Shown: in pieces, positions 10,247 through 64,000 of the stretch
How the letters are laid out: every line of letters starts with the position of its first letter
Numbering within the stretch: the first letter of the stretch is position 1
IMG/VR virus record: IMGVR_UViG_3300033146_002768
Coordinates: 143,112 to 207,111 of that record
Direction: 5' to 3' (one strand)
DNA length: 64,000 bases
The notes under the pieces: generated by a model
What the model was told of the DNA's origin: nothing
Database searches by the model: none
The model's input: the letters and a program-made list of their open reading frames with translations, nothing else
Made by a program: the position numbers and the translations under genes

Positions 10247-11265
10247 AAATTTTCTTGTCTCCATTCATAAATTTTTGTTAGTGTAATAGGATCAGCATTA
10301 GTAATATCCTTAGAGCTAACATCTTCATAACTATTACAGACTTTACAATGTTCATGATCAGATAAATTTAAATAAGCATTAGAACTATATACTTCATCTA
10401 ATTTCTGAATATTTAAATTTCCTATCTTTGTTTTAAAATATATATCACCAGAGCATCCACACCCTATCATAATACCTGTTGATGAAATAAAATTTTTAGT
10501 AAGAAAGTATTGACACATCTTAGGTCTTTCTTTAACATTAGCAGTTAATTTAAAATTTTCAGACTCTAATACTTCATTACTAATTAATGATCTACGACTA
10601 CAAAAATCATCTCTTGGAAATAACATAGAATTTGTCATTCGACTAATCTGAAATAATAACTTATAAGTTTCAGATGTTATTAGTAATTTATGATGTATTT
10701 TTGTTTTTGTATAAATAGGAATGTTTAAGTTTATATTTATATTATTATCAATTAAATATTTTAAATTATTTTTGAAATTTAAATAAAAGGTTTTTGTACT
10801 TCTGGCAAACCTTTCAAATTCAGAAAAATGTAAACCATAACAACTAATGCCTAACCAACTTATTTTTTTTAATGACAAGAGTTTATCTAAATATTTATTA
10901 TTATCAATTGTTAAATTTGTATAAAAATGATATCCATCAACATTGGGATGATTTTCTAATATATCTAATTTCTCAATAAATGTTTTATCTAAAAAAACTT
11001 CGCCATTCATTGGAGTTAATGAAAAATAAGTAAATCCAAAATCACAACATTGATTCAATATATCTTTAAACATATCAATTGACATACTCATTGACTTCTC
11101 TGTTTTCTTTTCACCTCTTTCTTTTTGATTACAATGGATACAATTTAAATTACATATATTGATAGATTCGATTGCAATATAGTTATAAAACATATTTCCA
11201 TTTTTAGTAAATGATTTATATCTAATATTCTTTTCTATATTAGGAAATTTTGAGAATGTAATCAT
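10243..11265 (-). CDS. Radical SAM protein with Twitch/SPASM-like C-terminus
   Basis: CNLNCIHC, MNGEVFL, C-terminal C...GCGC...IGNL...C..C. Confidence 0.85.
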   Translation of the reverse strand: MITFSKFPNIEKNIRYKSFTKNGNMFYNYIAIESINICNLNCIHCNQKERGEKKTEKSMSMSIDMFKDILNQCCDFGFTYFSLTPMNGEVFLDKTFIEKLDILENHPNVDGYHFYTNLTIDNNKYLDKLLSLKKISWLGISCYGLHFSEFERFARSTKTFYLNFKNNLKYLIDNNININLNIPIYTKTKIHHKLLITSETYKLLFQISRMTNSMLFPRDDFCSRRSLISNEVLESENFKLTANVKERPKMCQYFLTKNFISSTGIMIGCGCSGDIYFKTKIGNLNIQKLDEVYSSNAYLNLSDHEHCKVCNSYEDVSSKDITNADPITLTKIYEWRQENL

Positions 11266-12809
11266 TAGTCTTCCTTGTAGTAAGTATTTTTATTTATTAC
11301 TAATAAATCTATTTTATTATTATCTAACATTTCAAATGCATCTTCATACCAGTTAATAATTGTCTGTCCTTTTATATTAAAGCTTGTATTTAATAAACAA
11401 GGGATACCAGTTCTTTCTTTGAATTTTTTTAATAACTTATATATAAAAATATTATCTTTTGTAATTGTTTGGATTCGTGTTGTATTGTCTATATGTTTAA
11501 CTGCTTTAAAAAGATCAGTTTTATTATACCCCACAATATTCATATAAGGAAAATCTCCTTCTATATCAAAATATTTTGAAAGGTCATCTTTCAAAATCAT
11601 AATACCAAACGGTCTAAATTCTTCTCTATGTTTTACTCTTTTATTTAAAATATCTTTCATTTCTTTATTTCTTGGATCACATATTATAGATCTATTACCT
11701 AAAGATCTTGGTCCAATTTCTATTTCACCTTGAATTAAACCAACTATTTTTTTGTTAATTAATTCATCAATAAGTTTATCTAAGTTTAATGGTTCATTAG
11801 GTTTATTTGAATTTCCATTTAATTCTGGGCCAGTTATTGGAATAGAAATTTTATTCTTATAACAATTTAGTGCAGCACCTAAACATTGTCCAACATCACT
11901 TGGATAAGGAGTAAAATGATAATGTTCAAACATACCAGATTTTATTAATTTATAATTTAACATAACATTCAAAAAAGAACCTCCGGATAAACATATGTTA
12001 TTACTTAAGTATGAATATTTTTTAATTAAAAGAATAATCCTTTTAATCCATTCAACTTGAAATGTATAAGAAAAATCTTTTAAGTTTTTAACACGTTTAA
12101 CAATATAAGTATCAACTATATCGATTATTCTTTTATTTATTTTATCACCCATTATAAAAGGATTACTATTTAATATTAAATTAATTATATTTAAATATTT
12201 ATCATTATATTTTCCATAAGAACAATATGCCATAAATTTACCAGCTACATGTCCCTTATGATTAATCCCTTCAACATATTCTGGATTTATTTTTTCTAAA
12301 ACTTTAAATGATACTTTGGAAAAATGATTACCTAAAGGAAATTCAATTTTATCAATTTCTTTAATATTATTATCTTTACCATGAAAAATTCCACCATGAT
12401 TAAATTCTATTGAACCATCACTTCCTCCGTCTAAACTAATAATTAAAGAATCATTAAAATTGCTTGTATAGTATGAACTAGCTCCATGACATAAATGGTG
12501 AGAATAATATTTAACTTCTTTATATTTAATTTTTCCATTTAAAAAATATTTATCAAATAAATGTTTACTAAAAAATCTTTTTTCTTTTGCCATTAAATAA
12601 TTTGGAGAAACACAAATATAATCAAAATCATTTTCTACTTCTATTATTTTTTCAATGAATTTATTTATTATATCTTCTGTCCAATGTTTAACTTCAAAGT
12701 ATTTAATCTTAAAATATTTTTCTGCCTCAAAAAAATATTTGACTTTATTATCATTTATAATAACAAACCCACAATCATGAGGAACTAAATGTACGCCTAA
12801 TATTTTCAT
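11265..12809 (-). CDS. Carbamoyltransferase, CmcH/NodU/TobZ family (copy 1)
   Basis: HD, HHLCHGASSY, SLDGG, GKFMA, LSGGSFLNV, PYPSDVGQCLGA, EIGPRSLGNRSI, KHREEFRPF, NTSFN. Confidence 0.92.
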   Translation of the reverse strand: MKILGVHLVPHDCGFVIINDNKVKYFFEAEKYFKIKYFEVKHWTEDIINKFIEKIIEVENDFDYICVSPNYLMAKEKRFFSKHLFDKYFLNGKIKYKEVKYYSHHLCHGASSYYTSNFNDSLIISLDGGSDGSIEFNHGGIFHGKDNNIKEIDKIEFPLGNHFSKVSFKVLEKINPEYVEGINHKGHVAGKFMAYCSYGKYNDKYLNIINLILNSNPFIMGDKINKRIIDIVDTYIVKRVKNLKDFSYTFQVEWIKRIILLIKKYSYLSNNICLSGGSFLNVMLNYKLIKSGMFEHYHFTPYPSDVGQCLGAALNCYKNKISIPITGPELNGNSNKPNEPLNLDKLIDELINKKIVGLIQGEIEIGPRSLGNRSIICDPRNKEMKDILNKRVKHREEFRPFGIMILKDDLSKYFDIEGDFPYMNIVGYNKTDLFKAVKHIDNTTRIQTITKDNIFIYKLLKKFKERTGIPCLLNTSFNIKGQTIINWYEDAFEMLDNNKIDLLVINKNTYYKED

Positions 12810-16943: not shown

Positions 16944-18401
16944 TTAATCATGATTAAATACCTTTATATTGTGGTCTATTCCAAATTGGATTGCATCCGA
17001 TGAATTATTTACTAATGGTTGTCCTTTAACATTTAAACTAGTATTTAATAACATTGGGCATCCAGTCTTTTTATAAAATTCATTTATTAAATTCCAATAA
17101 CCAGGACTTTCTTTTTTATTAACTGTATGAACTCTTGATGTATTATCAACATGAACTATAGCAGGAAATTTATCAGGATACTTACATGTCATTACATATT
17201 GCATGTAAGGACTTTTAGAAATAATCATATTAAAATATTCAGCGGCATATTCCTCTAATATAGATGGTGAAAAAGGTCGAAACTTTTGACGATGTTTAAT
17301 GTCGTTAATTTTATCTTTTATATTATTCCCACGAGGATCAGCTAATAAAGATCTATTACCAAATGCTCTTGGTCCAAATTCTGCTCGACCATTTGCAACT
17401 CCAACAATATTACCTTTTAACAATTCTTCTAATAAAGATTTAACTGGATAATCACCTTTAATATTATGACCAAGATAAGGTCCTTTCCAATTTAATCTTC
17501 CATTAATTAATGAAGCGGCTCCTATAGAAGACCCCGAATCACCTGGATTAGGCATTATCCAAATGTCATTAAAATATTTAGGTATTAATCTATTAGCTAA
17601 ACAATTTAAAGCAACTCCGCCACAATAAACTAAATTTTTTGAATTAGATATATGTTTAGATTGTTTAATAATATTTTCAATTACTTCTTCTGTAACTTGT
17701 TGAATTGAAGCTGCTATATCTTTTAGATAAGCTCCTTGTAGATAATCATTTGGAATTCCTTTATGACAATTTATTTTAAGTTTAAAAAATTTATCTTTAA
17801 TAAAATCCTTTTTAATTTTATCAGCATAAGATGGATACCCCCAACCAGCCATTCCCATTAAAATATATTCATCTTCATTTGGTTTTAAACCACATCGTTG
17901 AGAAAATGCTGAATATAATATTCCTAATGAATGAGGATAATTAACTTTTTTCAATAATTTTAAATCATCTTTATTTCCTTCCCATATACTTAAAGTAGAC
18001 CATTCACCAATAGAATCTATACAAACAATAACAGCATTATCAAATGGAGAAGTAAAATAACTTGCAGCAGCATGACATTTATGATGATCCAAATATTTAA
18101 TTGGAGTTTTAGGAAAATCAAATTGTTTAAAATAATTATGAAATATATTTTTAGTTTGAAATACTTCATTATATTGACCAGCAAATAACTGTCTTGTTTT
18201 CTTTAAATATGGTTTTTCATAAAAAGCTATAACATCAGGAGTACCAAATCTTAAAGATTCATTTAATATTTCTTGGTTTAAATATAGATCATTTTTTATA
18301 CCAGAATATCGTTCTGAATGAGCAGCAAATAATATTTCATTGTCGTCTATTAATGCAATTGATGCATCATGACTTAGTGCATTTATTCCTAATACTTTCA
18401 T
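16944..18401 (-). CDS. Carbamoyltransferase, CmcH/NodU/TobZ family (copy 2)
   Basis: HDASIA, HHKCHAA, DSIGE, EYILMGMA, YCGGVALNC, PGDSGSSIGA, EFGPRAFGNRS, RQKFRPF, NTSLN. Confidence 0.93.
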   Translation of the reverse strand: MKVLGINALSHDASIALIDDNEILFAAHSERYSGIKNDLYLNQEILNESLRFGTPDVIAFYEKPYLKKTRQLFAGQYNEVFQTKNIFHNYFKQFDFPKTPIKYLDHHKCHAAASYFTSPFDNAVIVCIDSIGEWSTLSIWEGNKDDLKLLKKVNYPHSLGILYSAFSQRCGLKPNEDEYILMGMAGWGYPSYADKIKKDFIKDKFFKLKINCHKGIPNDYLQGAYLKDIAASIQQVTEEVIENIIKQSKHISNSKNLVYCGGVALNCLANRLIPKYFNDIWIMPNPGDSGSSIGAASLINGRLNWKGPYLGHNIKGDYPVKSLLEELLKGNIVGVANGRAEFGPRAFGNRSLLADPRGNNIKDKINDIKHRQKFRPFSPSILEEYAAEYFNMIISKSPYMQYVMTCKYPDKFPAIVHVDNTSRVHTVNKKESPGYWNLINEFYKKTGCPMLLNTSLNVKGQPLVNNSSDAIQFGIDHNIKVFNHD

Positions 18402-26531: not shown

Positions 26532-27107
26532 TTATTTAGTGCCTGAATAGTTACAATCACATGTACATGAATAATTACAATTACATGTGCAATAGTTACA
26601 ATTACAAGTACAATAGTTACAATTACAAGTACAAGCATAATTACAATCACAAGTACAATTATAATTACATTGACATGTACAAGCATAATTACAATCACAA
26701 ACACATTCAGTTTCCATTGTATTGACTTGCGATCTAATAGCATTATATTGATCTACTTGAATTAGATCTCCAACTTCTGTATCTGGATCGTCTAAATAAG
26801 ATGGCCATGTCCATGCTTTAGCAGCATTTACTCCATTTCTTAATTGTCTTACATGATTACTTTCAATTATATTTGTAGTAGCTACTGTTCCTGGGTCAGT
26901 TGGCCAACTTTGACTACGTCTAATTAATTCATCATCAATAGCATTTCTAAGTTCGTTATGATGTGTTGTTATAAACTTAGTAGATGTGGTTAACGGTTGT
27001 GTAGTCCACACAGTAGGAGATTCTGGGTATATTCCCTGAACATTAGATAGACAAGTGTTACTATGGTCTTCGCATGAAGATGGTGTTGTATGTCCTGTAC
27101 ATGCCAT
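26532..27107 (-). CDS. Cys-rich repeat fibre-like protein B (paralog of A)
   Basis: Seven C-x-C-x-C-N-Y units; shares HNELR.AI..EL.RRS.SWP.DPG and AWTWPSYL.D with A. Confidence 0.85.
   Translation of the reverse strand: MACTGHTTPSSCEDHSNTCLSNVQGIYPESPTVWTTQPLTTSTKFITTHHNELRNAIDDELIRRSQSWPTDPGTVATTNIIESNHVRQLRNGVNAAKAWTWPSYLDDPDTEVGDLIQVDQYNAIRSQVNTMETECVCDCNYACTCQCNYNCTCDCNYACTCNCNYCTCNCNYCTCNCNYSCTCDCNYSGTK
26547..26705 (-). repeat. 21/24-bp-period coding tandem repeat encoding CTCxCNY
   Basis: Seven units, directly readable. Confidence 0.95.
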
Positions 27108-27110
27108 AAT

Positions 27111-28259
27111 TTATCCTCCGTTTTGTTGCAATAATTTTCTTATCGCAAAAACTATTTTTCCATTTATTTTATAAAAATTGCATAATCTTGGTTGTGTAGT
27201 ATAATCTCTCCATTTCTCAAAATAGTCTTTCTTTTCACTTCGGTCAAATTTAACCGGATTACATCTTAAACAAAATGTCGCTAAGCAATTTTTACATTCC
27301 TCAGGTTCCCAACCAAAATTATTATTATGTAACTTATTAGTTATATCTAAATTTGTTATAAAGGATTCATTTTTAATATCAATAATTAAATGTTCACCTT
27401 TTTTATCATCGTACATACTTCCATGACATTTGAAAATATTACCATCCCAATTAACACAAACCATATCTCGACCTGCGCAACATAAAGCTTTATTAGGATT
27501 AAACCAACTAAAGAAGAATTTATTATTTGTTTTGAAAAATTCTATTTCTTCCTTAGCAATTTTAATTAAAGACTCATTCAGTTCTTTATTGAATACTTCT
27601 ATTTCTTTATTATTATATTTTTCTAAGTTATAATAATCTATTGTTGGAAAATAATTATCACTTCTAAAGAAATTATTTTCAGGCATTTCTTTATAAAGAT
27701 TTAATACATCTTCTCTTGCTTCAGGAAGATATTTAAATGCTTCAGGTGATATAGTAGATTTTATAACTGATGGTATTTTTCTTTTCCATAAGTCTTTAAT
27801 AACATTTCTTATTTTAGTACCAGTTAATTTATTCTTTTTAGTTTTTCTAAAGATATCATGAACTGGCATACCATCATATGATACTTGAACACAAAACTTT
27901 GGATGACCAAACAAAGATTTATTTTTAGATTCTTCAAATATATCCATATAACGATCTAATAAATATCCATTGCTATAAATAAAAAACTTTACTCTATCAT
28001 CTGTTTTAAAAGCAGTGTATATTTTTCTAATTGCTTTTTCATTAAGAGTAGGTTCCCCACCCCAAAATCCAATATTAAGTAAATCATAATTCTTTTTAAA
28101 GAAATCAGAATTTAAAAGTTGATTCATTTTTATAATAAACAATTCATGATCTTTAAATTCTTTATGTTCAAAAAATTCATGTTCAAAACAATAGGTACAA
28201 TTGAAATTACAATTTGCTGTAACCGTTAAGTCGATATTATATATTCTTATATTTTGCAT
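27111..28259 (-). CDS. Radical SAM/SPASM peptide-maturase-like protein
   Basis: CNFNCTYC, GGEPTL, SPASM-like CCAG...V...DGNIFKCHG...CKNC.ATFCLRC. Confidence 0.9.
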   Translation of the reverse strand: MQNIRIYNIDLTVTANCNFNCTYCFEHEFFEHKEFKDHELFIIKMNQLLNSDFFKKNYDLLNIGFWGGEPTLNEKAIRKIYTAFKTDDRVKFFIYSNGYLLDRYMDIFEESKNKSLFGHPKFCVQVSYDGMPVHDIFRKTKKNKLTGTKIRNVIKDLWKRKIPSVIKSTISPEAFKYLPEAREDVLNLYKEMPENNFFRSDNYFPTIDYYNLEKYNNKEIEVFNKELNESLIKIAKEEIEFFKTNNKFFFSWFNPNKALCCAGRDMVCVNWDGNIFKCHGSMYDDKKGEHLIIDIKNESFITNLDITNKLHNNNFGWEPEECKNCLATFCLRCNPVKFDRSEKKDYFEKWRDYTTQPRLCNFYKINGKIVFAIRKLLQQNGG

Positions 28260-31370: not shown

Positions 31371-32195
31371 TTATACCTCAATCCAAACGTTACCAGCAGA
31401 ATAAGGTGCTAAAGAAACAACGTCAAATTGATTAGCTAAAGTAACAGTTGTATTTCCTTCAATAGTATCACTACCTTGTCTTTGAACAGTTACAGTGTTG
31501 GCATCAGAAGAAAGTTTCATTATTCTAATAACTCTATCTGATGTAGATGCTAAAGGTAATTCAACTATAGTGTTTCCAGCAGCAGTACTTACAACTACAG
31601 TATCATCTTCTGATGTAGCGGTATATGTTCCACCGCCAGTAACCTCAGAATAAACTACAGATGTTCCTGCTCCACCACCACCAGCTGTTGATGTTCCAAT
31701 GCTTGGATTTTCTGGATCATAATTAAATACTGCATCAACTTGTTCAACTCCACCTGGAGCACTTACTTCTATAGCACCAAGGAAAAGGTGTGTACCTGGA
31801 TTATAAACAGATGCTCTTTGTGAAGGTTTAATAATCTTAACAGATGCTTCTGGTGGAGGAGATATCTTTGCATATTCATAATGAAGGACTAGATAATAAT
31901 ATCCAACCTCATTCCAAACACCACCTGCTCCATCTACATAAAAATCGACATCTGTCATATCAACATTAATGTTTTCAATTTCAATTAATACATCATCCAT
32001 TATTGCTTTGCCAGCATTTGCTCTTGAAGTAGTATTGTTAACTATTTCTACAGTTATAGGAGATGGCATTAATAATACATTTGCACCATCTGATATAATT
32101 CTAGTAAGTTTATTTACTACATCTGAGTTGTAGCTTGAATAAGGATCAACACTTCTGACTTGTGTAGGAATTGGGTTCCCCATAATTTCCTCCAA
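31371..32195 (-). CDS. Tail/baseplate-associated structural protein
   Basis: C-terminal T4 fibre-type beta module (VVSTAAGN.I.LP....R.I.I.K....N.VTV...G.DTIEG). Confidence 0.55.
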   Translation of the reverse strand: MEEIMGNPIPTQVRSVDPYSSYNSDVVNKLTRIISDGANVLLMPSPITVEIVNNTTSRANAGKAIMDDVLIEIENINVDMTDVDFYVDGAGGVWNEVGYYYLVLHYEYAKISPPPEASVKIIKPSQRASVYNPGTHLFLGAIEVSAPGGVEQVDAVFNYDPENPSIGTSTAGGGGAGTSVVYSEVTGGGTYTATSEDDTVVVSTAAGNTIVELPLASTSDRVIRIMKLSSDANTVTVQRQGSDTIEGNTTVTLANQFDVVSLAPYSAGNVWIEV

Positions 32196-32267
32196 TTTAT
32201 TTTACTTTCTAAGTGAACTTTAATCTTATGAGTTTCTAAAGTGGCAAAAACCACTAAAATCGACAAA

Positions 32268-32286
32268 TATTTATAATATGTTCTAT
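32268..32286 (-). promoter_or_regulatory. Putative late promoter
   Basis: TAGAACATATTATAAATA upstream of tail gene 32195. Confidence 0.6.
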
Positions 32287-32326
32287 TTCAATTTACATGC
32301 TAGATTTATATTTTAATAGTATGATT

Positions 32327-32342
32327 CTATATATATTAATAA
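32327..32342 (+). promoter_or_regulatory. CTATATATATTAATAA motif (putative early/host-RNAP promoter), copy 1
   Basis: Same 16-mer at 49658..49673 and a one-mismatch copy at 49418..49433. Confidence 0.5.
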
Positions 32343-32359
32343 ACATAATATAACACAAA

Positions 32360-32453
32360 GCAATTGTACCGACGGAATATTTGGGATAATGCAAGGTGTT
32401 TGACATCTTACATTATCCCAAAAGTAACATCATCCGTATTTAGTAAATTGTGC
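32360..32453. ncRNA. Candidate structured non-coding RNA (long hairpin)
   Basis: TTGGGATAATG (32381-91) pairs with CATTATCCCAA (32411-21); inner AAGGTGT/ACATCTT; outer ACGGA/TCCGT; no ORF. Confidence 0.4.
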
Positions 32454-32501
32454 AAAATAACTGATTAGTAATTTATAATATGTTCTATATGTTTGGTTAA
32501 C

Positions 32502-33125
32502 TTAGTCACTTATTATATCAGTGTCCTCAAATACATCTTGAACAGTAGGATAGTGTTTATCTACTGTTACAATTATCCAGCCATCATCTTTTAATTTTTG
32601 ATTTTTATGTGGATCAGGAAATGGATCTTCATTATGCCAAAAAGAATTAGGAAAGTCAAATGCTACTTTCTTAATAGGGTCAGCCATATCAGTAATATAT
32701 TTCCATAATAATGCATCATCATGAAAATGTCTTTTCTCTATACTATAATTATTTTCTAAGTAAGGATAAGCATCATGAAGGAATGTTAGAATATCAGCTT
32801 TATTTTTTGATACTCCTTCTAAGTTTATATGTGAAAACTTATCATTCAATAAAGGATTATCAATATCTATTTCTTCATCTAATGGTTCAGATGGTATTCC
32901 TTCTGTATCTTGAAATAGAATACTATCTTTGAATTTATATCTTGTCGCTTGATATTGTGTGCTAGATATAGGACAATCTGGATACTTTAATTTATACTCA
33001 GCGAAGGTCATTCCATCATGTTTCTTTTTTAAATGTTTAGGTGTTATAAGTCTGAATGCTTCGCCACACTCTTGGCATATAACTTTACCATTTATACCTT
33101 TAGGATATTGCAACTCAATAGTCAT
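32502..33125 (-). CDS. Zn-finger plus degenerate DUF559/Vsr-like endonuclease
   Basis: CQEC...HLKKKH finger; YITDMADPIKKVAFDFPNSFWH where active enzymes have D....IE.DG..WH. Confidence 0.6.
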   Translation of the reverse strand: MTIELQYPKGINGKVICQECGEAFRLITPKHLKKKHDGMTFAEYKLKYPDCPISSTQYQATRYKFKDSILFQDTEGIPSEPLDEEIDIDNPLLNDKFSHINLEGVSKNKADILTFLHDAYPYLENNYSIEKRHFHDDALLWKYITDMADPIKKVAFDFPNSFWHNEDPFPDPHKNQKLKDDGWIIVTVDKHYPTVQDVFEDTDIISD

Positions 33126-33244
33126 TAATTTTCCCCTTAATCAAATCATTACATTTATTTAATTATATGTTCTATATTTGGAACATTATTACATATAAAA
33201 GAACAAATCTAAAATATAAACATATAATATATAAGGAGTTTAAA

Positions 33245-51677: not shown

Positions 51678-53129
51678 TTATGCAGTAATTGTACAAGCAC
51701 AAATACCATTACTTCTGATAAGAGCAGTTGCATATCTTGACAGGATAGTCAAGCTAGGTGTTGCTCCTAACGGATATGGGTGTAAAACTGCTGGCACATA
51801 TGGGGCATATATGTAAACAGATTTTAATTCTTCTACTGGTTTATAAACCATCAACATTGTTCCTTGAGGAATAACTGCTGAAGTCAATACTTTCCATTTT
51901 CCACCAGCAACTGTTGCACTTCTATAACCCATGTCGCCATCTACTGAAGAAGTTCCAGTATAGTTGAAGCCTTGAAGATCTTCAAGAATAGCTACGTCAA
52001 GAGGGTTAGCAGCAATAACATTTGCAGCTTCCATGTTAGTATCAGTATAAACTTGAGCTGATAGTTTATTCAATACTGGGATGATATTTTCATGCCAATA
52101 TTTGTCGCCCCAAGTATATCCAGATGGAGCTGTTCTAGCAAATGTACCAGTATGATCTGAAGTATTAAGTCTTGCATTTGCAGTAATAAGTGCATTAACA
52201 ATCTCTCTATCAATATCAAGAGCAATTTGTTGTCCAAGAACATTAACAATTTCAGCTTGCATAGAAAGATCAAAAAGAGCTCTCATGTCTTGTTCCATGT
52301 TAATAGTCCAGTTAGCACTGATCTGTCTGTCTTTAGCATATAGACGTACTTTGTCTACACTTAATTTAACAGATGGATTAATTTTATTTTCTTCTAGTGA
52401 GAAAGTTACTTTATACTTAACAAATTTGACTGTACCAGTAGTACTAGATACATCAACAACACCGTCAAGATAATTAACTTTACCAGAAATAACATCACTA
52501 GTTGAGTTTACAGTTACGCTTGAAGAAAAATGACCTTCAACAGCAGGAACAATAGATACGTTTGTCCAAGCAGTACCATCGTCAGAAACAGCTGTGATTT
52601 CAAAATCTCTTTCAAGATGTGCTTCATTAGAAGTAACACCAGCTACTGCAAGTACGTCAAATGCATCACTTGGAACTGGGAGTTGAGCTGAAACAGGAGT
52701 ACCAACAATAGGTCCATTTGAAATATCTTGACCTGTAACAGGTGCTGGATATTGAGTAGAACTATTAGATGGAGCAAAAGTTGCTTTTAAGAATGCTTTA
52801 ATTGTTTCTGGTTTGTCCATTGGAGAAACAGTAATAAGTTCTTTAGCAATAAGTTTTGGATAGAAAACTCTAAGAATAGGAAGAGTCAAAGTTTCGTAAG
52901 GATTGATCTGAAACATTGAATTTTCAAGTAAATTAACTCTTGTGTTTTCTGCTAACATTACAAATTGTTCTCTGTCTTTTTTGTTTTCAATACTTTCTGC
53001 TAGACCAGTAACATAAGCATCAAAAGCAACGTCATCGACTAAGACTTGTTTCATATTTCCAGGTTTAGATGGATCGACACCAGAAATTTTCTTAGTTGTT
53101 GCGTATACTTCTTGAAGAAGTTCTTTCAT
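51678..53129 (-). CDS. Major capsid protein (T4 gp23-like)
   Basis: IA.ELI.V.PM, W..E..QD...L..L....E....L...I...IDREI, C-terminal Y.PYVP...P..T..SRYA. Confidence 0.9.
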   Translation of the reverse strand: MKELLQEVYATTKKISGVDPSKPGNMKQVLVDDVAFDAYVTGLAESIENKKDREQFVMLAENTRVNLLENSMFQINPYETLTLPILRVFYPKLIAKELITVSPMDKPETIKAFLKATFAPSNSSTQYPAPVTGQDISNGPIVGTPVSAQLPVPSDAFDVLAVAGVTSNEAHLERDFEITAVSDDGTAWTNVSIVPAVEGHFSSSVTVNSTSDVISGKVNYLDGVVDVSSTTGTVKFVKYKVTFSLEENKINPSVKLSVDKVRLYAKDRQISANWTINMEQDMRALFDLSMQAEIVNVLGQQIALDIDREIVNALITANARLNTSDHTGTFARTAPSGYTWGDKYWHENIIPVLNKLSAQVYTDTNMEAANVIAANPLDVAILEDLQGFNYTGTSSVDGDMGYRSATVAGGKWKVLTSAVIPQGTMLMVYKPVEELKSVYIYAPYVPAVLHPYPLGATPSLTILSRYATALIRSNGICACTITA

Positions 53130-56253: not shown

Positions 56254-58149
56254 TTAGTAACTGCCCATACCTCCACCCATTGCATCCATTCCATCTTCTT
56301 TCTCAGTACCTAATTCTTTCTCAATTTTCTCACCTACTTCATAATTCTTTAAATCTTCCCAATCAATATTAGATAAGTATTTCTTTTTAGTATATTCTCT
56401 TGGAATACCAACTCTTTCAAGAGTTTCAATAAGGTTAGCAATCTCACTCATGTATCTAGCTTCTCTTTCATATTGAAGAGATTTTGGGCTAGGTAATGCT
56501 ATTAATACATTATCAAGAATTGATAGAGCTTCATCTGGACTTATAATATCATAAACTTTTTGTATAAGTTTATTTATTTGGTGTGATATATATTTTTGAT
56601 GACTAACAATTGTTCTAGCGAATAAAATATTCTCTTCTGTAAGAGCTGCTTTATTAGATAAGTTTTCCTCAATATTAATAAAACTTGGAGGAACTCCTAA
56701 ACTAGCAACAACACTGTCTCTCAAAAATTTTAATTCTTCTACTTTATTTCTAATATCAACATTACCCTCATTGAATGTACTAATATCAACAAATGGTTTT
56801 CCATCTTTCTGAGGAATATAAACATCTTCAAATGTTGTTATCATAGAAGGAATAGTATCAACAGTACCAAAATTATCAAGAGTAATCTTTCTTTTTCTTA
56901 ATTCCTCTTTTAATTTTTCAATCATTTTTCTGGCATCTCTTGGAAGTCCAATTTCAACAGCAATTTTTCTTTTCTCTGTTGAACGTGCTAGACGTTGTAC
57001 TGCTAATGCTGTTTCCATTGCTACAAGACATTTAGCAGAAAATTGTGATGCATCAAATATAGATTCACCATAAGGTTCATACTTAGTAGATGGTCTCATA
57101 AAATGTTGAACTTTATCGGGTGGGACATATCTAATATTCATAGCTTTACTTTGGTCTTGTCCAGAAGCAACCATTTGAGCTACTATATCTTTTAATTCTT
57201 TACTATTAAATTCAGCTACTTGAGGAACTTTTTTAGAAAGATTTTTTAATATTGAATTACAAATATCATTAACCGCTTGATCTTGGACTGATAAATGAGG
57301 AACTGTATTAGCTTTAGGAAATATTAAATATCCAAAACATACTGGATATAATTCACTTTGTAATTTAACAACTCTTGAAGGATCATGAAATAATAATACA
57401 ACATCTGATTTATTTGATTTGCCATCAGTTTCTATTTCTTCATCTGCTTCACTTAATACACTTGATTCTTTTGAATCTGCGAATGATTCATAGTTCATTG
57501 TTATATTCCAAGTACCTTCATCCTTAGTAGCTACTTCAAGAGTTTCTATATATCCTTCTTCTATTATTTTTGCTTGTTCTGCTAAATAAGAAGAACTAGT
57601 TAAAGCTGTTTTTGGAGATGCTATTTCACAAAAATAATCTCCAAACAATAAAGTATTTCTTACTATTAATGATAAATGTTCTTCAAGTTTTAATTTATTA
57701 ACTAATCCTTTTACTTGAACTGTTTTTGCTTCTGTCGGAGTTTCATCTTCTAAAAACTTTTTAGGTTTAATTTCTAATGTCGTTTTTGTAATATCATCTG
57801 GCGAACAAATATTGTCTGTTAAAACATCTAATGCTCTATAACAATAATCAATAGTTCTAATAGTTCCATCATATGATTTATATCGAATCATTCTTTTTTG
57901 TTGACCGAACATAGCTGGTGAAGTATTACCTTGACCAAATATTCCTTTAGATGATGAATCAATATTAAACGAACCGGTGGATTTAGAAATTAAATTTCTT
58001 ACAAGATCAATATAACCATTTCTACCGCTCTGAGATTTATAGTTAGTAATGGATGTTACTGCATCATCTAACTTAGCATCAATGTCAGTAGTTTTAGTAC
58101 CGATTATAGTTTTCTTTAGTGCTTCGAAGTTATCTTTAAGACCAGCCAT
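56254..58149 (-). CDS. Portal protein (T4 gp20-like)
   Basis: R.L.RL.RSTE.R...V..G, ED..IP..DG, LGVP.SF, upstream of the prohead protease. Confidence 0.88.
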   Translation of the reverse strand: MAGLKDNFEALKKTIIGTKTTDIDAKLDDAVTSITNYKSQSGRNGYIDLVRNLISKSTGSFNIDSSSKGIFGQGNTSPAMFGQQKRMIRYKSYDGTIRTIDYCYRALDVLTDNICSPDDITKTTLEIKPKKFLEDETPTEAKTVQVKGLVNKLKLEEHLSLIVRNTLLFGDYFCEIASPKTALTSSSYLAEQAKIIEEGYIETLEVATKDEGTWNITMNYESFADSKESSVLSEADEEIETDGKSNKSDVVLLFHDPSRVVKLQSELYPVCFGYLIFPKANTVPHLSVQDQAVNDICNSILKNLSKKVPQVAEFNSKELKDIVAQMVASGQDQSKAMNIRYVPPDKVQHFMRPSTKYEPYGESIFDASQFSAKCLVAMETALAVQRLARSTEKRKIAVEIGLPRDARKMIEKLKEELRKRKITLDNFGTVDTIPSMITTFEDVYIPQKDGKPFVDISTFNEGNVDIRNKVEELKFLRDSVVASLGVPPSFINIEENLSNKAALTEENILFARTIVSHQKYISHQINKLIQKVYDIISPDEALSILDNVLIALPSPKSLQYEREARYMSEIANLIETLERVGIPREYTKKKYLSNIDWEDLKNYEVGEKIEKELGTEKEDGMDAMGGGMGSY

Positions 58150-60472: not shown

Positions 60473-62059
60473 TTAAAATGCTTCGCCCATACCTCCAAAG
60501 TCTTTTAGTGGCGGTGGCGGTTTAGTAACTGTAAATTTATTAGATCCAAAATCTATTTTAGTACCTTGAGGAAGTGGTTGTTGTTGTTGTGCTCCATTTG
60601 GGTTTAATGCATCAGGAGAATTTTCATTATTAACTTTTCTACAACTTATAAATCTAAAGTGAGCATAATTAACTTTAAATTCCAAGCTAACATTACTAAC
60701 CCCACTTCTATTTTTACCTACTTTAGCATATACTATAGTATCATCAACCGGATTTCTAGATAATAAAATTACAAAATCTGCATGCTCAACTTTCTTTACT
60801 GATTCTGAAATCTGATCTAAACTTAATTCACCTGCATTTTGAACTCTATATGCACCTCTACCGAGTTGTGTAGGTAACCATACAGGAATATTATATTCAA
60901 CTGCTATTGTTTTCATTGATAAAGTAATATGTCCTAACTCAAGTCTATACATATCATATTTAGTATCACATTTTAATAGATCTAAATAATCTACATATAA
61001 TCCTTTAATAGTACCAGGTCCATATTCAGAAATTGCATCATCAAGAATTCCAACTATATCAAGAGGTGATACACTCATTGCAGGAAAGTATTTCATAATA
61101 ATAGTTGAATTACAAGCTTGCATTCTATCAAGAAGTTTTTGTTTAATATTAACTCCACCTGATATATCTCTTAACACATCATTTTTATCTCTTTGAAATA
61201 AAGGTTGATATGTTCTTAATAAAGATTCTTCAATAGTATTTTCAAGAGTTATGTAAATATAAACATTCTCAACACCATCTTTTTTAGGTTTAGGTTTATC
61301 TTCTGGTGCATCAAATATATTTGGATTAGAGGTTGCGGCATTAATAATTATATTATTTAAAAATGTCGATTTACCAGAACCCGGAGCTCCACCGATAACA
61401 TATAATCTTGATGGTTCTCCACCTCCATTCAATATTTCATTATCAAGTATTTGGTATCCGGTAGGTGTAGTATTTTTTCTTTCATATTTTTTAACAATTA
61501 ATTCTAATACACTTTCATAATCATCTGCTACTAAATCAAGAGAAGCAGCTGCTTCAATAGAAACCCCTCTCTTCTCATTCATCATATTTAGATACATTGT
61601 TTGAATAACATTTTCATAATCCAGTGCTAAATCATCCAAACTATCAAATGACCCATCTCTAAATTGATTTACGAATTTACTTAAATCATCGTAATTTTCA
61701 AATAATGAATTATAAGTCTTTTTTAATCTTAATTGTTTTACTATATCGACAGCAGCACTATCTTTAATTACTTCAGTTCTTTTAAACTCTAAAAAATCTT
61801 GAAGCATATTAAATTTCTTGCTATACATTAAACTATCAATAGCATTTTGGGTAGATTTATCATCCATCTTCATTTGACATATTTTCTTTAAACAATCAAA
61901 TTTAGTCTTAACATTCATAGGAATTTCTAACTGTTCTTTAGATTCATGAAAACCTAGAACAGATAAGACATCTCTATATAAAGCTTTATTCTTTTTTATT
62001 TTAATAGACTTATTTATAACAACACTAAAACAAGAATTTAAAAAAGATTCTGTTATCAA
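60473..62059 (-). CDS. DnaB/gp41-like replicative helicase
   Basis: TPTGY..LD, GGAPGSGKST, YITLE, VDYLDL, PTQL.R, ES..K...AD, K.R.G. Confidence 0.9.
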   Translation of the reverse strand: MITESFLNSCFSVVINKSIKIKKNKALYRDVLSVLGFHESKEQLEIPMNVKTKFDCLKKICQMKMDDKSTQNAIDSLMYSKKFNMLQDFLEFKRTEVIKDSAAVDIVKQLRLKKTYNSLFENYDDLSKFVNQFRDGSFDSLDDLALDYENVIQTMYLNMMNEKRGVSIEAAASLDLVADDYESVLELIVKKYERKNTTPTGYQILDNEILNGGGEPSRLYVIGGAPGSGKSTFLNNIIINAATSNPNIFDAPEDKPKPKKDGVENVYIYITLENTIEESLLRTYQPLFQRDKNDVLRDISGGVNIKQKLLDRMQACNSTIIMKYFPAMSVSPLDIVGILDDAISEYGPGTIKGLYVDYLDLLKCDTKYDMYRLELGHITLSMKTIAVEYNIPVWLPTQLGRGAYRVQNAGELSLDQISESVKKVEHADFVILLSRNPVDDTIVYAKVGKNRSGVSNVSLEFKVNYAHFRFISCRKVNNENSPDALNPNGAQQQQPLPQGTKIDFGSNKFTVTKPPPPLKDFGGMGEAF

Positions 62060-62072
62060 AAACTACCTCCTA

Positions 62073-62444
62073 TCATCTACTAAGGTTGTATGCTATTTTT
62101 CGCTCTAATTTTTTTCTATAATCTTTATCAATACTTTGTTTAATTTCTTCACTTGATTTTTTAAATGGGACATCATCTTCTGGAAACCAACAAGACCATT
62201 CCATAAATATTTGAGAGTTAATATTCCTCTCTACTTCTTCATTTATTCTTTTACCAACAACATTTTCAATCCAATCAAGTTTTCCGTCTCCATAACATTT
62301 TTGACATGATATATGAGATGAAAAAAATCTTTGATACTTTTTATCTTTCTTAATCTCTATTTGACCAGTACCTTTACACACTTTACATTCTGATTCGCCT
62401 GTTTTTAGTTCATCATATGCTTTATAATCTTTTTTAATATCCAT
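62073..62444 (-). CDS. Protein with DnaJ-type CxxCxGxG zinc-finger pair
   Basis: CKVCKGTG and CQKCYGDG. Confidence 0.7.
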   Translation of the reverse strand: MDIKKDYKAYDELKTGESECKVCKGTGQIEIKKDKKYQRFFSSHISCQKCYGDGKLDWIENVVGKRINEEVERNINSQIFMEWSCWFPEDDVPFKKSSEEIKQSIDKDYRKKLERKIAYNLSR

Positions 62445-62446
62445 AA

Positions 62447-63820
62447 CTACACCGTTAACAATCTAGTTGTATGATCTAAATCAGAAAACTCATCTTTAGC
62501 TAAATGTTTATTAACAATATACTTACAATAATCTTCATCAAGATCAATTAACATTTTAATTGAATTAACTAATGAGTGAGTTTTGGCTTTTTGTTTTCTA
62601 GTTATTTTTCCTTGATTAACATTTTGAGTTACTAAACCACATTGTTTATTAAACTCTTCTAAGTCACCTGATTGATATATTGGGAATACTTCACTTGCTT
62701 TTTGTCTTAGTAATAATTGAGTATCAGCATATGTTCTTAACACCAAACACGCTGCATATAATCTAAAATCATCTGGAAATGTTCCTGTAACTTTATTATA
62801 AATTTCAAAAGTTTTAAGTCTTTTTAAATTATAACGATCCGACATATTATTTATTCTATCTTCAATAATATCAGTAACACTTGTTGTAGTATTAGGATGA
62901 AATCTTTTATCAAGACATGCTGTTCGTAAATCAACTTTTCTTATAATTTTATCATTATCTAATATATGTATTGTTCTACCTCTCATTAGACCTTTAAACA
63001 CACCAGAACTATCATAACTAATTCTTAATTCAACATCGTGAGTTTCTTTAACAACCTTTTGGAATATCTCATAAAAGAAAATGTCTCTAAAATTAGCTCC
63101 ACCTAATATATGAAAGTCTAATTCTTTTCGACCAGCTGCAATAGCTTTTTTAAGGACAGGAATCAAAGGAAGAACATAAATTATACAAGGTATAGCAGTA
63201 TCAGAACTCATATTAGCAACTATACCGCCAGTACCAAAATGAGTAAATGCATCTAATTCTGTATAGATATCCCACAGTTTAGGAGTTCTAAAATGATGAA
63301 TATAAATCACTTTATCTCTTACCTCTTTAGGTAACTGTCTTGCCATATTATAAGTTCGTTCATTACCATAAAAAATATCATCAAAGTTTTTAAATAATTT
63401 ACAACCAGGACCAGGAGGCAAATCTAATATAAATGCTTTATCAATACAATCATGTTCTTCTCTTAAAAATTGATGATATAATTGAATTAAGTTTTCAGTT
63501 TCATGTTCATCTATTCTTCCTATAGATGCTTGGAATCCGCCGCTATCAACTATAAAATTACAATTATCAAATATTCCTAATGATCTGCAATCTCTAAATA
63601 GAGCTGCTTCCTTTGCAACATATTTATCATATTTCTTTTTACCAGTAAAATTTTGACCAAATGAATGTAGGAAACCATGACATGTTTCGGATAGAAAATT
63701 CGACATAATATCTGGTGTGAAATTATCATCCCAATTATCCTGCATATTTTTAATCGAGAAATTTTTCACATAGGTTGCCATAGTCTCAAAACCGGCTAAC
63801 ACATAATTACTATCTGACAT
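62447..63820 (-). CDS. tRNA-guanine transglycosylase-like (DpdA-like) protein
   Basis: VDSGGFQ TGT signature, LDLPP, GGI, HILG, YDSS. Confidence 0.7.
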   Translation of the reverse strand: MSDSNYVLAGFETMATYVKNFSIKNMQDNWDDNFTPDIMSNFLSETCHGFLHSFGQNFTGKKKYDKYVAKEAALFRDCRSLGIFDNCNFIVDSGGFQASIGRIDEHETENLIQLYHQFLREEHDCIDKAFILDLPPGPGCKLFKNFDDIFYGNERTYNMARQLPKEVRDKVIYIHHFRTPKLWDIYTELDAFTHFGTGGIVANMSSDTAIPCIIYVLPLIPVLKKAIAAGRKELDFHILGGANFRDIFFYEIFQKVVKETHDVELRISYDSSGVFKGLMRGRTIHILDNDKIIRKVDLRTACLDKRFHPNTTTSVTDIIEDRINNMSDRYNLKRLKTFEIYNKVTGTFPDDFRLYAACLVLRTYADTQLLLRQKASEVFPIYQSGDLEEFNKQCGLVTQNVNQGKITRKQKAKTHSLVNSIKMLIDLDEDYCKYIVNKHLAKDEFSDLDHTTRLLTV

Positions 63821-63888: not shown

Positions 63889-64000
63889 TTATTCATCATC
63901 TCTTAATTCTGCAACTGTTGGAGTTTCATCATTATATGATACTCGTTTATGATAAATACTTTCAAGTTCTTTAATGAGAATTTTTTTAGTAGTATTTAAC
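63889..64000 (-). CDS. 3' end of a gene entering from outside the window
   Basis: ...LNTTKKILIKELESIYHKRVSYNDETPTVAELRDDE-stop. Confidence 0.5.
   Translation of the reverse strand, partial: LNTTKKILIKELESIYHKRVSYNDETPTVAELRDDE

What the first reader, a model, noticed from the sequence alone, without database searches (positions are those of the whole stretch)
62447..63820. TGT/DpdA-like transglycosylase suggests 7-deazaguanine DNA modification
Seen: DSGGFQ, LD.PP, H.LG and DSS motifs, with the gene upstream of the helicase. Established: phage DpdA enzymes swap guanine in DNA for preQ0/preQ1 derivatives to evade restriction. No FolE/QueD/QueE/QueC is seen in this window. This is also the main alternative explanation for some island enzymes (further decoration of a deazaguanine).
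Basis: partly seen in the sequence, partly recalled or inferred. Interest (0 to 1): 0.6.

Follow-up and report, generated by a model that had tools for sequence, protein, structure and literature searches.

The report
New phage DpdA-like DNA transglycosylase family
This gene of an uncultivated T4-like jumbo phage encodes a very divergent relative of the enzymes that swap guanine in phage DNA for 7-deazaguanine bases, which protects the DNA from host restriction. It belongs to a large subfamily that has apparently not been described.

Summary
Window 62447-63820 (-) is a 457-aa ORF carrying DSGGFQ, LDLPPGPGC, HILGG and YDSSG. D92, D133, H237, L239 and D270 are invariant in 69 homologues down to 19% identity.

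Pfam and NCBIfam find nothing. The AlphaFold model nevertheless matches tRNA-guanine transglycosylases (Z 19-20) and bacterial DpdA (Z 15.9), well above other TIM barrels (Z 11.7 or less). The best viral match is the validated preQ0 DNA insertase DpdA2 of Vibrio phage nt-1. A profile comparison with the DpdA2 family gives 97.7% probability and E 1.6e-12, with all four motifs in register.

The family has at least 329 clusters at 50% identity, all metagenomic. It sits in a conserved module, PolB - QueE - ... - DpdA-like - Zn-finger - DnaB, in 28 of 30 related loci, and co-occurs with QueC and QueD. This contig ends 180 bp upstream of the gene, inside the neighbouring HD-protein gene. In the closest relative, QueE and QueC lie in the stretch this contig lacks. 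QueD is present elsewhere on the contig.

The best reading is a new DpdA subfamily that inserts preQ0 or a close 7-deazaguanine into phage DNA. Substrate and target are inferred, not shown. The radical-SAM island is not co-distributed with the gene.

The parts
62447..63820 (-). DpdA-like guanine transglycosylase gene, 457 aa (P0001). TIM-barrel core about residues 1-300, helical C-terminal part about 310-440.
   Evidence: ORF. AF2 model pLDDT 85.7, pTM 0.88. TGT Z 19-20, bacterial DpdA 7ui4 Z 15.9, other TIM barrels 11.7 or less. BFVD top hit is nt-1 DpdA2. hhalign against the DpdA2 family: probability 97.7, E 1.6e-12.
63530..63547 (-). DSGGFQ motif (D92-Q97). D92 corresponds to E. coli TGT D89 and DpdA2 D76.
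   Evidence: Invariant D92; S93, G95 and Q97 at 90% or more. Aligned to E. coli TGT DSGGFQ and to DpdA2 DSGGLQ.
63401..63427 (-). LDLPPGPGC motif. D133 corresponds to DpdA2 D112 (FDEIP), the position of the base-recognising Asp of TGTs.
   Evidence: D133 invariant. Aligned to the invariant D112 of the DpdA2 family.
63098..63115 (-). FHILGG motif (H237, L239, G240). Corresponds to DpdA2 H235-x-L-G and to TGT YLMGVG.
   Evidence: H237 and L239 invariant. Aligned to DpdA2 and to E. coli TGT.
63002..63016 (-). YDSSG motif. D270 is the candidate catalytic nucleophile and corresponds to DpdA2 D266.
   Evidence: D270 invariant. Aligned to the invariant D266-S267 of DpdA2. Lies at the end of strand 264-271.
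63889..64000 (-). 3' end (last 36 codons plus stop) of an HD-domain phosphohydrolase gene, cut by the contig end.
   Evidence: tblastn with the HD protein of the closest relative: 83% identity over 36 aa at the contig end. Translation. That relative's protein matches HDIG TIGR00277, E 1.8e-16.
62073..62444 (-). 123-aa protein with two CxxCxGxG zinc-finger repeats, between the DpdA-like gene and the helicase.
   Evidence: PF00684 DnaJ_CXXCXGXG, E 8.8e-07. Found between DpdA-like and DnaB in 18 of the 26 related loci that hold both genes.
60473..62059 (-). DnaB-like replicative helicase, 528 aa.
   Evidence: PF03796 E 3.8e-18; phrog_19 E 6.6e-46. Downstream of the DpdA-like gene in every related locus that extends that far.

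Best explanation
The gene encodes a DNA guanine transglycosylase of the TGT/DpdA superfamily. It belongs to a subfamily distinct from bDpdA and DpdA1-4 and closest to DpdA2.

Proposed mechanism, by analogy with TGT and DpdA:
1. The phage makes a 7-deazaguanine base from host-derived H2NTP, using its own QueD, QueE and a short QueC. The base is most likely preQ0, because no QueF is found.
2. The enzyme flips out a guanine in double-stranded phage DNA.
3. D270 attacks C1' to form a covalent enzyme-DNA intermediate and guanine leaves.
4. The deazaguanine, positioned by D133 and the H237-L-G loop with D92 acting as acid/base, is joined to the sugar.

The gene is packed with the replication genes (PolB, QueE, HD protein, Zn-finger, DnaB), so modification probably acts on newly replicated DNA and shields it from host restriction.

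Shown here: the fold, the conserved residues, homology to DpdA2, the gene linkage and the co-occurrence.
Inferred: catalysis, DNA rather than tRNA as target, the identity of the base, and the protective role.
For: Fold:
- VIA-align gives Z 19-20 over about 305-320 residues to bacterial, archaeal and eukaryotic TGTs. All 50 top rows are TGTs.
- One search gives ArcTGT 19.9, bacterial TGT 17.6, QTRT2 16.6, DpdA 7ui4 15.9, Cap10 13.6, then unrelated TIM barrels at 11.7 or less.
- In BFVD the 25 best hits are phage TGT/DpdA-type or unnamed proteins. Rank 1 is R9TGF0 of Vibrio phage nt-1 (E 6.4e-9). It has the same length (464 aa) and organism as DpdA2 YP_008125322; sequence identity was not checked.

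Known function of the closest relative: nt-1 DpdA2 inserts preQ0 into DNA in E. coli (PMC10516641, Table 3; PMC6884629).

Sequence:
- hhalign of the family (A2) against the DpdA2 family (A3): probability 97.7%, E 1.6e-12, 255 columns. D92/D76, D133/D112, H237/H235 and D270/D266 are in register and invariant in both families.
- Weak direct hit to phrog_887, queuine tRNA-ribosyltransferase (E 4e-4).
- Bridging member L064: phrog_887 E 1e-50, A2 HMM E 1e-7.

Context:
- A QueE-like gene lies upstream on the same strand in 28 of 30 loci; the start-to-start distance is 0.8-5.3 kb in 16 of the 17 close-family records with a QueE hit. It has CxxxCxxC and QGEG motifs, and its five best NCBIfam hits include four QueE models.
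- At E 0.01 or better, QueC is found in 19 of 29 related records, QueD in 14 of 29 and QueE-like in 25 of 29.
- Distant family members sit in phages with FolE, QueD, QueE and QueC, two of them in complete genomes.
- L048 has Gat-QueC, radical SAM, QueE, dNMP kinase, DpdA-like and DnaB within 6.4 kb.
- The own contig holds QueD with the CxxxHGH motif.
- No QueF is found.
- No tRNA genes are found in 207 kb.
Against: - No biochemical or nucleoside data exist for any member of this family.
- Pfam TGT, NCBIfam and the DpdA2 PHROG (phrog_10773) do not recognise the protein. HMM-to-sequence scores against nt-1 DpdA2 and E. coli TGT are at noise level.
- By structural Z-score the model is nearer to the tRNA enzymes (19-20) than to the single solved bacterial DpdA (15.9).
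- Co-occurrence with QueC/D/E would also fit a tRNA-modifying enzyme.
- QueE and QueC are not on this contig. Their presence in this phage is inferred from synteny with a relative whose DpdA-like protein is 79% identical.
- FolE is absent from all close relatives.
- The clade's QueC is short and lacks the C-terminal Cys cluster, so the base made may not be preQ0.
- The comparison with a TGT profile (E 4e-4) used a shallow TGT alignment (Neff 2.2), so the margin in favour of DpdA2 is overstated.
Confidence: 0.72

Rival explanations
1. It is a phage-encoded tRNA-guanine transglycosylase that puts preQ0 or preQ1 into host tRNAs to tune translation, not into DNA.
For: The highest structural Z-scores are to tRNA TGTs. 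QueC/D/E co-occurrence fits either target.
Against: - The profile comparison is much closer to the DNA enzyme DpdA2 (E 1.6e-12) than to a bacterial TGT profile (E 4e-4, 58 columns).
- No conserved Cys/His zinc site is present, and no PUA or other RNA-binding domain was detected.
- There are no phage tRNA genes on 207 kb.
- The gene is fixed in the replisome module between PolB/QueE and DnaB.
- No QueF is found, which bacterial-type tRNA insertion of preQ1 would need.
- All phage TGT homologues tested so far act on DNA (PMC6884629, PMC10516641).
Confidence: 0.08
2. It is a DpdA-type DNA transglycosylase whose substrate is not preQ0 but another 7-deazaguanine (CDG, ADG or a further derivative), as proposed for DpdA3. 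In this phage the base may be decorated further by the radical SAM / carbamoyltransferase island.
For: - The clade's QueC is truncated (182-215 aa, PF06508 positions 1-186) and lacks the Zn-binding Cys cluster.
- DpdA subfamilies differ in substrate, and DpdA2 is promiscuous (PMC10516641).
- G000 carries 17 radical SAM hits, two carbamoyltransferases and a methyltransferase.
Against: - The island is not co-distributed with the gene. Relatives have 0-7 radical SAM hits and no carbamoyltransferase.
- The short QueC keeps the SGGxDS PP-loop, and its best NCBIfam hit is the QueC equivalog (E 8e-27).
- Nothing links any island enzyme to purine chemistry.
Confidence: 0.13
3. It is a TGT-fold protein with another role, for example a non-catalytic partner like QTRT2, a Cap10-like protein-modifying enzyme, or another glycosylase.
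For: QTRT2 (Z 16.6) and Cap10 (Z 13.6) are among the structural matches. No family HMM recognises the protein.
Against: - All three catalytic-type Asp residues and the base-pocket loop are invariant across at least 69 divergent members.
- No CD-NTase or CBASS genes were seen among the genes annotated next to the DpdA-like gene.
- The gene is linked to QueE.
Confidence: 0.05

Closest known systems
DpdA2 (Vibrio phage nt-1 YP_008125322; phrog_10773)
   Same: - Similar length (464 against 457 aa) and the same TIM-barrel core.
- Four collinear invariant motifs: DSGG(L/F)Q, (F/L)D..P, H.LG and YDS(S/T).
- No Pfam TGT hit for either protein and no conserved zinc site.
- Both are encoded by large T4-like phages next to preQ0 genes.
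- hhalign probability 97.7%, E 1.6e-12; best BFVD structural match.
   Different: - About 13-16% identity.
- Not a member of phrog_10773, and HMM searches do not cross between the two families.
- The C-terminal 170 residues do not align.
- The nt-1 gene sits inside a FolE/QueD/ArcS/QueC cluster. This family sits in the replisome module between PolB/QueE and DnaB.
- Close clade members lack FolE.
Bacterial DpdA (Salmonella dpd system, PDB 7ui4)
   Same: TGT-fold DNA preQ0 insertase. Structural match Z 15.9, 298 residues aligned.
   Different: 8% identity. The DpdB ATPase partner and the rest of a dpd cluster were not searched for; none appears among the genes annotated around the DpdA-like gene. 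No conserved Cys/His zinc site here.
tRNA-guanine transglycosylases (bacterial TGT, archaeal ArcTGT, eukaryotic QTRT1; PF01702)
   Same: Same fold (Z 19-20, about 305-320 residues, rmsd about 4 A). DSGGFQ and the GG / (H/Y)-L-M/I-G segments align locally to E. coli TGT.
   Different: No PF01702 match at E 1 or better. No CxCxxC...H zinc site and no PUA domain. Replication-module context. About 10-12% identity.
DpdA1 (phage 9g / CAjan type), DpdA3 (Cellulophaga phiST, Campylobacter CP220) and DpdA4 (HVTV-1; PF20314)
   Same: All are phage or viral TGT-superfamily proteins tied to 7-deazaguanine genes. DpdA3 and DpdA4 were likewise defined by remote homology plus context (PMC10516641).
   Different: No PF01702 or PF20314 hit. 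A 259-aa phiST protein appears only at BFVD rank 35, E 0.017. Direct profile comparison with DpdA1, DpdA3 and DpdA4 was not done.

Membership tests
TGT/DpdA superfamily | TGT-type (beta/alpha)8 barrel fold | tested here: met
   AF2 model pLDDT 85.7. Z 19-20 to TGTs and 15.9 to DpdA, against 11.7 or less for other TIM barrels. Foldseek top PDB hit is TGT 2ash, E 1.7e-4.
TGT/DpdA superfamily | Conserved Asp in DSGGFQ (E. coli D89 / Z. mobilis D102) | tested here: met
   D92 is invariant in 69 sequences and aligned to E. coli TGT D89.
TGT/DpdA superfamily | Base-recognising Asp (Z. mobilis D156) and catalytic nucleophile Asp (Z. mobilis D280) | tested here: inconclusive
   D133 and D270 are invariant and align to the invariant D112 and D266 of DpdA2. 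Direct alignment to the TGT residues stops 5 residues short of D270. No residue-level structural superposition was available.
TGT/DpdA superfamily | Zinc site CxCxxC...H in the C-terminal subdomain | tested here: not met
   No Cys or His is invariant or nearly invariant after residue 240 in A2. The DpdA2 family also has no invariant Cys.
TGT/DpdA superfamily | Match to Pfam PF01702 | tested here: not met
   No Pfam family at E 1 or better for P0001. None of 69 members hits PF01702 at E 0.01 or better. No match in the whole genome.
DpdA2 | Membership of the nt-1 DpdA2 sequence family (phrog_10773) | tested here: not met
   nt-1 DpdA2 hits phrog_10773 at E 1.5e-211. P0001 has no such hit at E 0.01 or better. 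The A1 profile finds nothing in the nt-1 genome. The A2 HMM scores E 0.019 at Z=1000.
DpdA2 | Profile-level homology with shared active-site motifs | tested here: met
   hhalign A2 against A3: probability 97.7, E 1.6e-12, 255 columns, four motifs in register.
DpdA (functional class) | Genomic association with 7-deazaguanine synthesis genes | tested here: met
   QueE is adjacent in 28 of 30 loci. QueC in 19 of 29 records, QueD in 14 of 29. The full pathway is present in distant members. QueD is on the own contig.
DpdA (functional class) | Exchange of guanine in DNA for a 7-deazaguanine | not testable with these tools
   Needs expression plus LC-MS/MS of DNA nucleosides.
DpdA4 | Match to PF20314 (DUF6610) | tested here: not met
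   No Pfam hit.
DpdA3 | Sequence or profile similarity to phiST CGPG_00065 / CP220 homologues | not tested
   Only indirect evidence: a 259-aa phiST protein at BFVD rank 35, E 0.017.

The most novel reading that the evidence does not exclude
This is a sixth DpdA subfamily, confined so far to uncultivated T4-like jumbo phages, that works at the replication fork. It inserts a base other than preQ0, for example ADG or CDG made by the zinc-less short QueC. In this particular phage the base is further elaborated by the radical-SAM / carbamoyltransferase island into a new hypermodified 7-deazaguanine.
Probability: 0.1. Interest if true: 0.8.

Novelty: new variant of a known kind. Interest (0 to 1): 0.5.

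Why it matters
7-Deazaguanine DNA modification is a major phage counter-defence against restriction enzymes, and in one study against Cas9 in vitro. Five transglycosylase subfamilies are known (bDpdA and DpdA1-4).

This family is invisible to Pfam, NCBIfam and the DpdA2 PHROG, and it has no tblastn match in 50,697 GenBank phage records. Yet it has at least 329 clusters at 50% identity in metagenomes. Deazaguanine modification in environmental jumbo phages may therefore be substantially under-counted by current annotation.

The family's fixed position inside the replisome module, its FolE-less pathway and its truncated QueC give concrete hypotheses about when and with what base the DNA is modified. 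The protein is a tractable target for expression in E. coli.

Tried and rejected
Searches that found nothing useful:
- Pfam and NCBIfam scans of the protein: no hit.
- phmmer against PDB: only a spurious repeat-driven hemocyanin hit.
- A1 and A2 profiles against PDB: nothing significant. Sub-threshold Z. mobilis TGT hits at E 0.45-1.2 are one protein in many entries.
- tblastn of P0001 and two distant members against 50,697 phage records: no match.
- A1 profile and phrog_887 against the nt-1 genome: nothing.
- hhalign against single sequences (E. coli TGT, nt-1 DpdA2): only low-probability local alignments. A family alignment on the target side was needed.

Ideas considered and rejected:
- The QueE-like gene is an NrdG activase. 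Rejected because its large upstream neighbour is a UDG-fused family B DNA polymerase, not NrdD. It carries the QGEG motif, and QueE models score 54-60 bits against 30 for NrdG.
- QueC and QueE are truly absent from this phage. Rejected as unproven. The contig is 66% complete, and the 115 kb of the closest relative that holds them has no counterpart on the contig.
- The radical SAM island belongs to the system. Not supported.

- The genome search cannot centre on a locus of another tool.
- The TGT profile from genome contigs held only gammaproteobacterial sequences, so it is shallow.

Full report
**The object**

The window is the last 64 kb of a 207,111-bp IMG/VR virus record that CheckV estimates to be 66% complete. 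On the minus strand, 62447-63820 is a single 457-aa ORF (P0001). It is followed, after 2 and 13 bases, by two genes:
- a 123-aa protein with two CxxCxGxG zinc-finger repeats (PF00684, E 8.8e-07);
- a 528-aa DnaB-like helicase (PF03796, E 3.8e-18; phrog_19, E 6.6e-46).

The phage is T4-like: it has a gp20-type portal at 56254-58149 and a gp23-type capsid protein at 51678-53129. It is AT-rich, with GC 0.21-0.33.

DSGGFQ (residues 92-97), LDLPPGPGC (132-140), FHILGG (236-241) and YDSSG (269-273) are all present. The word search found 552 homologues of about 460 aa. None has a Pfam domain, all named ones are called hypothetical, and many lie on contigs of 200-308 kb.

In 32 homologues the motifs are invariant. 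A profile search of 1.84 billion cluster representatives found 329 clusters at E 0.001 or better. In an alignment of 69 full-length representatives down to 19% identity, the only invariant columns besides the start Met are D92, D133, H237, L239 and D270. S93, G95, Q97, G198, G199 and G240 are conserved at 90% or more. The four strings are therefore the functional core of a large family, not chance matches.

**What it is**

Family libraries fail. Pfam and NCBIfam give nothing. PHROGs gives only a weak hit to phrog_887, queuine tRNA-ribosyltransferase (E 4e-4, residues 84-178).

Structure gives a clear answer. The AlphaFold2 model (pLDDT 85.7, pTM 0.88) is a TIM barrel followed by a helical C-terminal part. 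In an exhaustive VIA-align search of 48,161 PDB representatives, the top five are all TGT-superfamily proteins:

| Protein | PDB | Z |
|---|---|---|
| Archaeosine TGT | 1iq8 | 19.9 |
| Bacterial TGT | 3unt | 17.6 |
| QTRT2 | 6fv5 | 16.6 |
| DNA preQ0 insertase DpdA | 7ui4 | 15.9 |
| Cap10 | 9ntn | 13.6 |
| Unrelated TIM barrels | - | 11.7 or less |

In the second-look search all 50 rows are TGTs, at Z 18.8-20.0 with about 300-324 aligned residues.

Against predicted viral structures, the 25 best hits are phage TGT/DpdA-type or unnamed proteins. Rank 1 is R9TGF0 of Vibrio phage nt-1 (464 aa, E 6.4e-9). It matches in length and organism the gene VPFG_00171 / YP_008125322, which lies between the FolE and QueC genes of nt-1; I did not check sequence identity. 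That protein is DpdA2. It was defined in PMC6884629 and shown in PMC10516641 (Table 3) to insert preQ0 into DNA when expressed in E. coli.

**Homology to DpdA2**

nt-1 DpdA2 also has no Pfam hit and belongs to phrog_10773, which P0001 does not match. HMM-to-sequence searches do not connect the two families.

Profile against profile does connect them. The family alignment A2, compared with an alignment of 44 DpdA2 homologues (A3), gives probability 97.7% and E 1.6e-12 over 255 columns. The following residue pairs are in register, and each is invariant in its own family:
- D92 with D76
- D133 with D112
- H237 with H235
- D270 with D266

The C-terminal 170 residues do not align.

The same family alignment against a bacterial TGT profile gives only a 58-column local match (probability 35%, E 4e-4). 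That TGT profile is shallow (Neff 2.2), so the contrast is indicative only. Local alignments do place DSGGFQ on E. coli TGT D89-Q94 and the GG / HILG segments on the TGT GGL / YLMGVG segments.

Neither this family nor DpdA2 has the conserved Cys/His zinc site of TGTs.

**Genomic context**

I fetched 43 related IMG/VR loci. The 12 distant loci scored (L048, L052-L054, L056, L059-L064; L055, L057 and L058 encode the same protein as L056) are members of the same broad family by HMM (E 1e-37 to 1e-148), apart from L064. L064 is a phrog_887 member (E 1e-50) that still scores E 1e-7 against A2 and so bridges the two families.

Across 29 related records, at E 0.01 or better:

| Gene | Records |
|---|---|
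| QueC | 19 of 29 |
| QueD | 14 of 29 |
| QueE-like | 25 of 29 |
| FolE | 7 of 29, distant members only |
| QueF | 0 of 18 searched |

Two of the FolE-carrying records are 100% complete, and there QueD, QueE and FolE lie about 5-7 kb from the transglycosylase gene.

The close clade has a conserved order: UDG-fused family B DNA polymerase, then QueE, then 0.3-3 kb of variable genes (ThyX and an HD protein in the nearest relative), then the DpdA-like gene, an optional zinc-finger gene, DnaB, and further downstream the portal. PolB plus QueE lie upstream in 28 of 30 loci.

The QueE assignment rests on three points:
- Four of its five best NCBIfam hits are QueE equivalogs (E 3e-16 to 2e-8), all below their curated cut-offs; the fifth is NrdG2 (E 3.7e-7).
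- It has a CxxxCxxC cluster and the QGEG motif.
- Its large neighbour is a polymerase, not NrdD.

One 33%-identity member (L048) has Gat-QueC, radical SAM, QueE, dNMP kinase, DpdA-like and DnaB within 6.4 kb. That layout is reminiscent of phages that make archaeosine.

**Why this window shows no que genes**

The contig ends 180 bp upstream of the gene. Its last 108 bases encode the C-terminal 36 residues of the HD protein that precedes the DpdA-like gene in the closest relative, at 83% identity. The contig therefore breaks inside the conserved module.

That relative is G001, whose DpdA-like protein is 79% identical. Gene-by-gene comparison shows:
- G001 1-46 kb corresponds to G000 51-1.6 kb.
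- G001 161-203 kb corresponds to G000 207-169 kb.
- G001 46-160 kb has no counterpart on G000.

That missing stretch holds QueE (157.5 kb) and QueC (96.3 kb; TIGR00364, E 8e-27). The two contigs are complementary fragments of genomes of roughly 320 kb.

G000 itself carries QueD at 26867-27292, outside the window (PF01242, E 7.5e-26; TIGR03367, E 1.5e-22; CxxxHGH motif). It has no detectable QueC, FolE or QueF.

**Interpretation**

The most likely function is a DpdA-type exchange of guanine in phage DNA for preQ0 or a close 7-deazaguanine. It would be supplied by phage QueD, QueE and QueC acting on host H2NTP.

Four things favour DNA over tRNA as the target:
- the much closer profile relationship to DpdA2;
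- the absence of a zinc site and of any detected RNA-binding domain;
- the absence of tRNA genes on 207 kb;
- the fixed place in the replisome module.

None of these is proof. The base is uncertain because the clade's QueC is short (182-215 aa) and lacks the C-terminal Cys cluster.

That island (window 8.5-32 kb) has 11 radical SAM proteins among 27 ORFs, plus two carbamoyltransferases and a methyltransferase. The suggestion finds no support. Thirteen relatives carrying the gene have 0-7 radical SAM hits, and none has a carbamoyltransferase.

**Novelty**

The searchable literature knows bDpdA and DpdA1-4. No DpdA5 or DpdA6 turned up. This family fails the recognisers of DpdA1 (PF01702), DpdA2 (phrog_10773) and DpdA4 (PF20314). 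DpdA3 was not compared directly. No isolated phage in GenBank carries a tblastn-detectable member. I therefore rate it a new variant (subfamily) of a known kind of enzyme. The biology is expected, but the family is large and unannotated.

**Limits**

- I had no residue-level structural superposition.
- There are no experimental data for any member.
- The TGT comparison profile was shallow.
- The presence of QueE and QueC in this phage is inferred from synteny.

Noticed in passing
window 8583-32195 (-): Low-GC island (0.21-0.25) of 27 co-oriented ORFs. 11 are radical SAM proteins (4 with Fer4_12, 2 with SPASM). There are also two carbamoyltransferases (11265-12809, 16944-18401), one methyltransferase and one DUF6071 protein. 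The whole contig has 17 radical SAM hits. Relatives have 0-7 and no carbamoyltransferase; only the closest relative shares part of the island at its contig end.
   Followed up: partly
window 63889-64000 (-): The contig ends inside an HD-domain phosphohydrolase gene, of which only the last 36 codons are present. The assembly therefore breaks within the conserved PolB-QueE-HD-DpdA-DnaB module.
   Followed up: yes
L022:2755-6030 (+), closest relative: The family B DNA polymerase of this phage clade carries an N-terminal uracil-DNA-glycosylase-superfamily domain (PF03167, E 1.7e-17), fused to the exonuclease and polymerase domains.
   Followed up: no
L065:6323-6871 (+), closest relative: The clade's QueC is only 182-215 aa. 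It keeps the SGGxDS PP-loop but lacks the C-terminal cysteine cluster of canonical QueC. It lies next to a dCMP-deaminase-like gene and a nucleotide-sugar dehydrogenase.
   Followed up: partly
L068:2478-3503 (-), closest relative: QueD there is the C-terminal third (residues 214-326) of a 341-aa protein with a Cys/His-rich N-terminal extension. In G000 QueD is a stand-alone 141-aa protein (G000 26867-27292), next to a protein with a type IV pilin N-methylation motif.
   Followed up: no
L048:5023-11413 (+): A 33%-identity family member sits in a compact cluster: Gat-QueC fusion (557 aa), radical SAM, a 252-aa ORF, QueE, dNMP kinase, DpdA-like, DnaB. The Gat-QueC suggests an archaeosine-type (dG+) product.
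   Followed up: partly
whole contig G000 (window plus L011-L018): ARAGORN finds no tRNA genes in 207 kb, which is unusual for a jumbo T4-like phage. About a third of the genome is missing, however.
   Followed up: no
G000 against G001: The two contigs are complementary, oppositely oriented fragments of related genomes of about 320 kb. Each lacks roughly the 115 kb that the other has.
   Followed up: yes
window about 32000-33200 and about 50600: GC skew flips sign at both points, and the gene strand switches with it (minus, then plus, then minus). This marks divergent and convergent transcription blocks.
   Followed up: no
L015:12133-14595 (+) = G000 92133-94595: An 820-aa protein has a weak match to a DNA phosphorothioation-system restriction enzyme domain (TIGR04095, E 5.6e-6). 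It is followed by a PA0069-family radical SAM protein.
   Followed up: no
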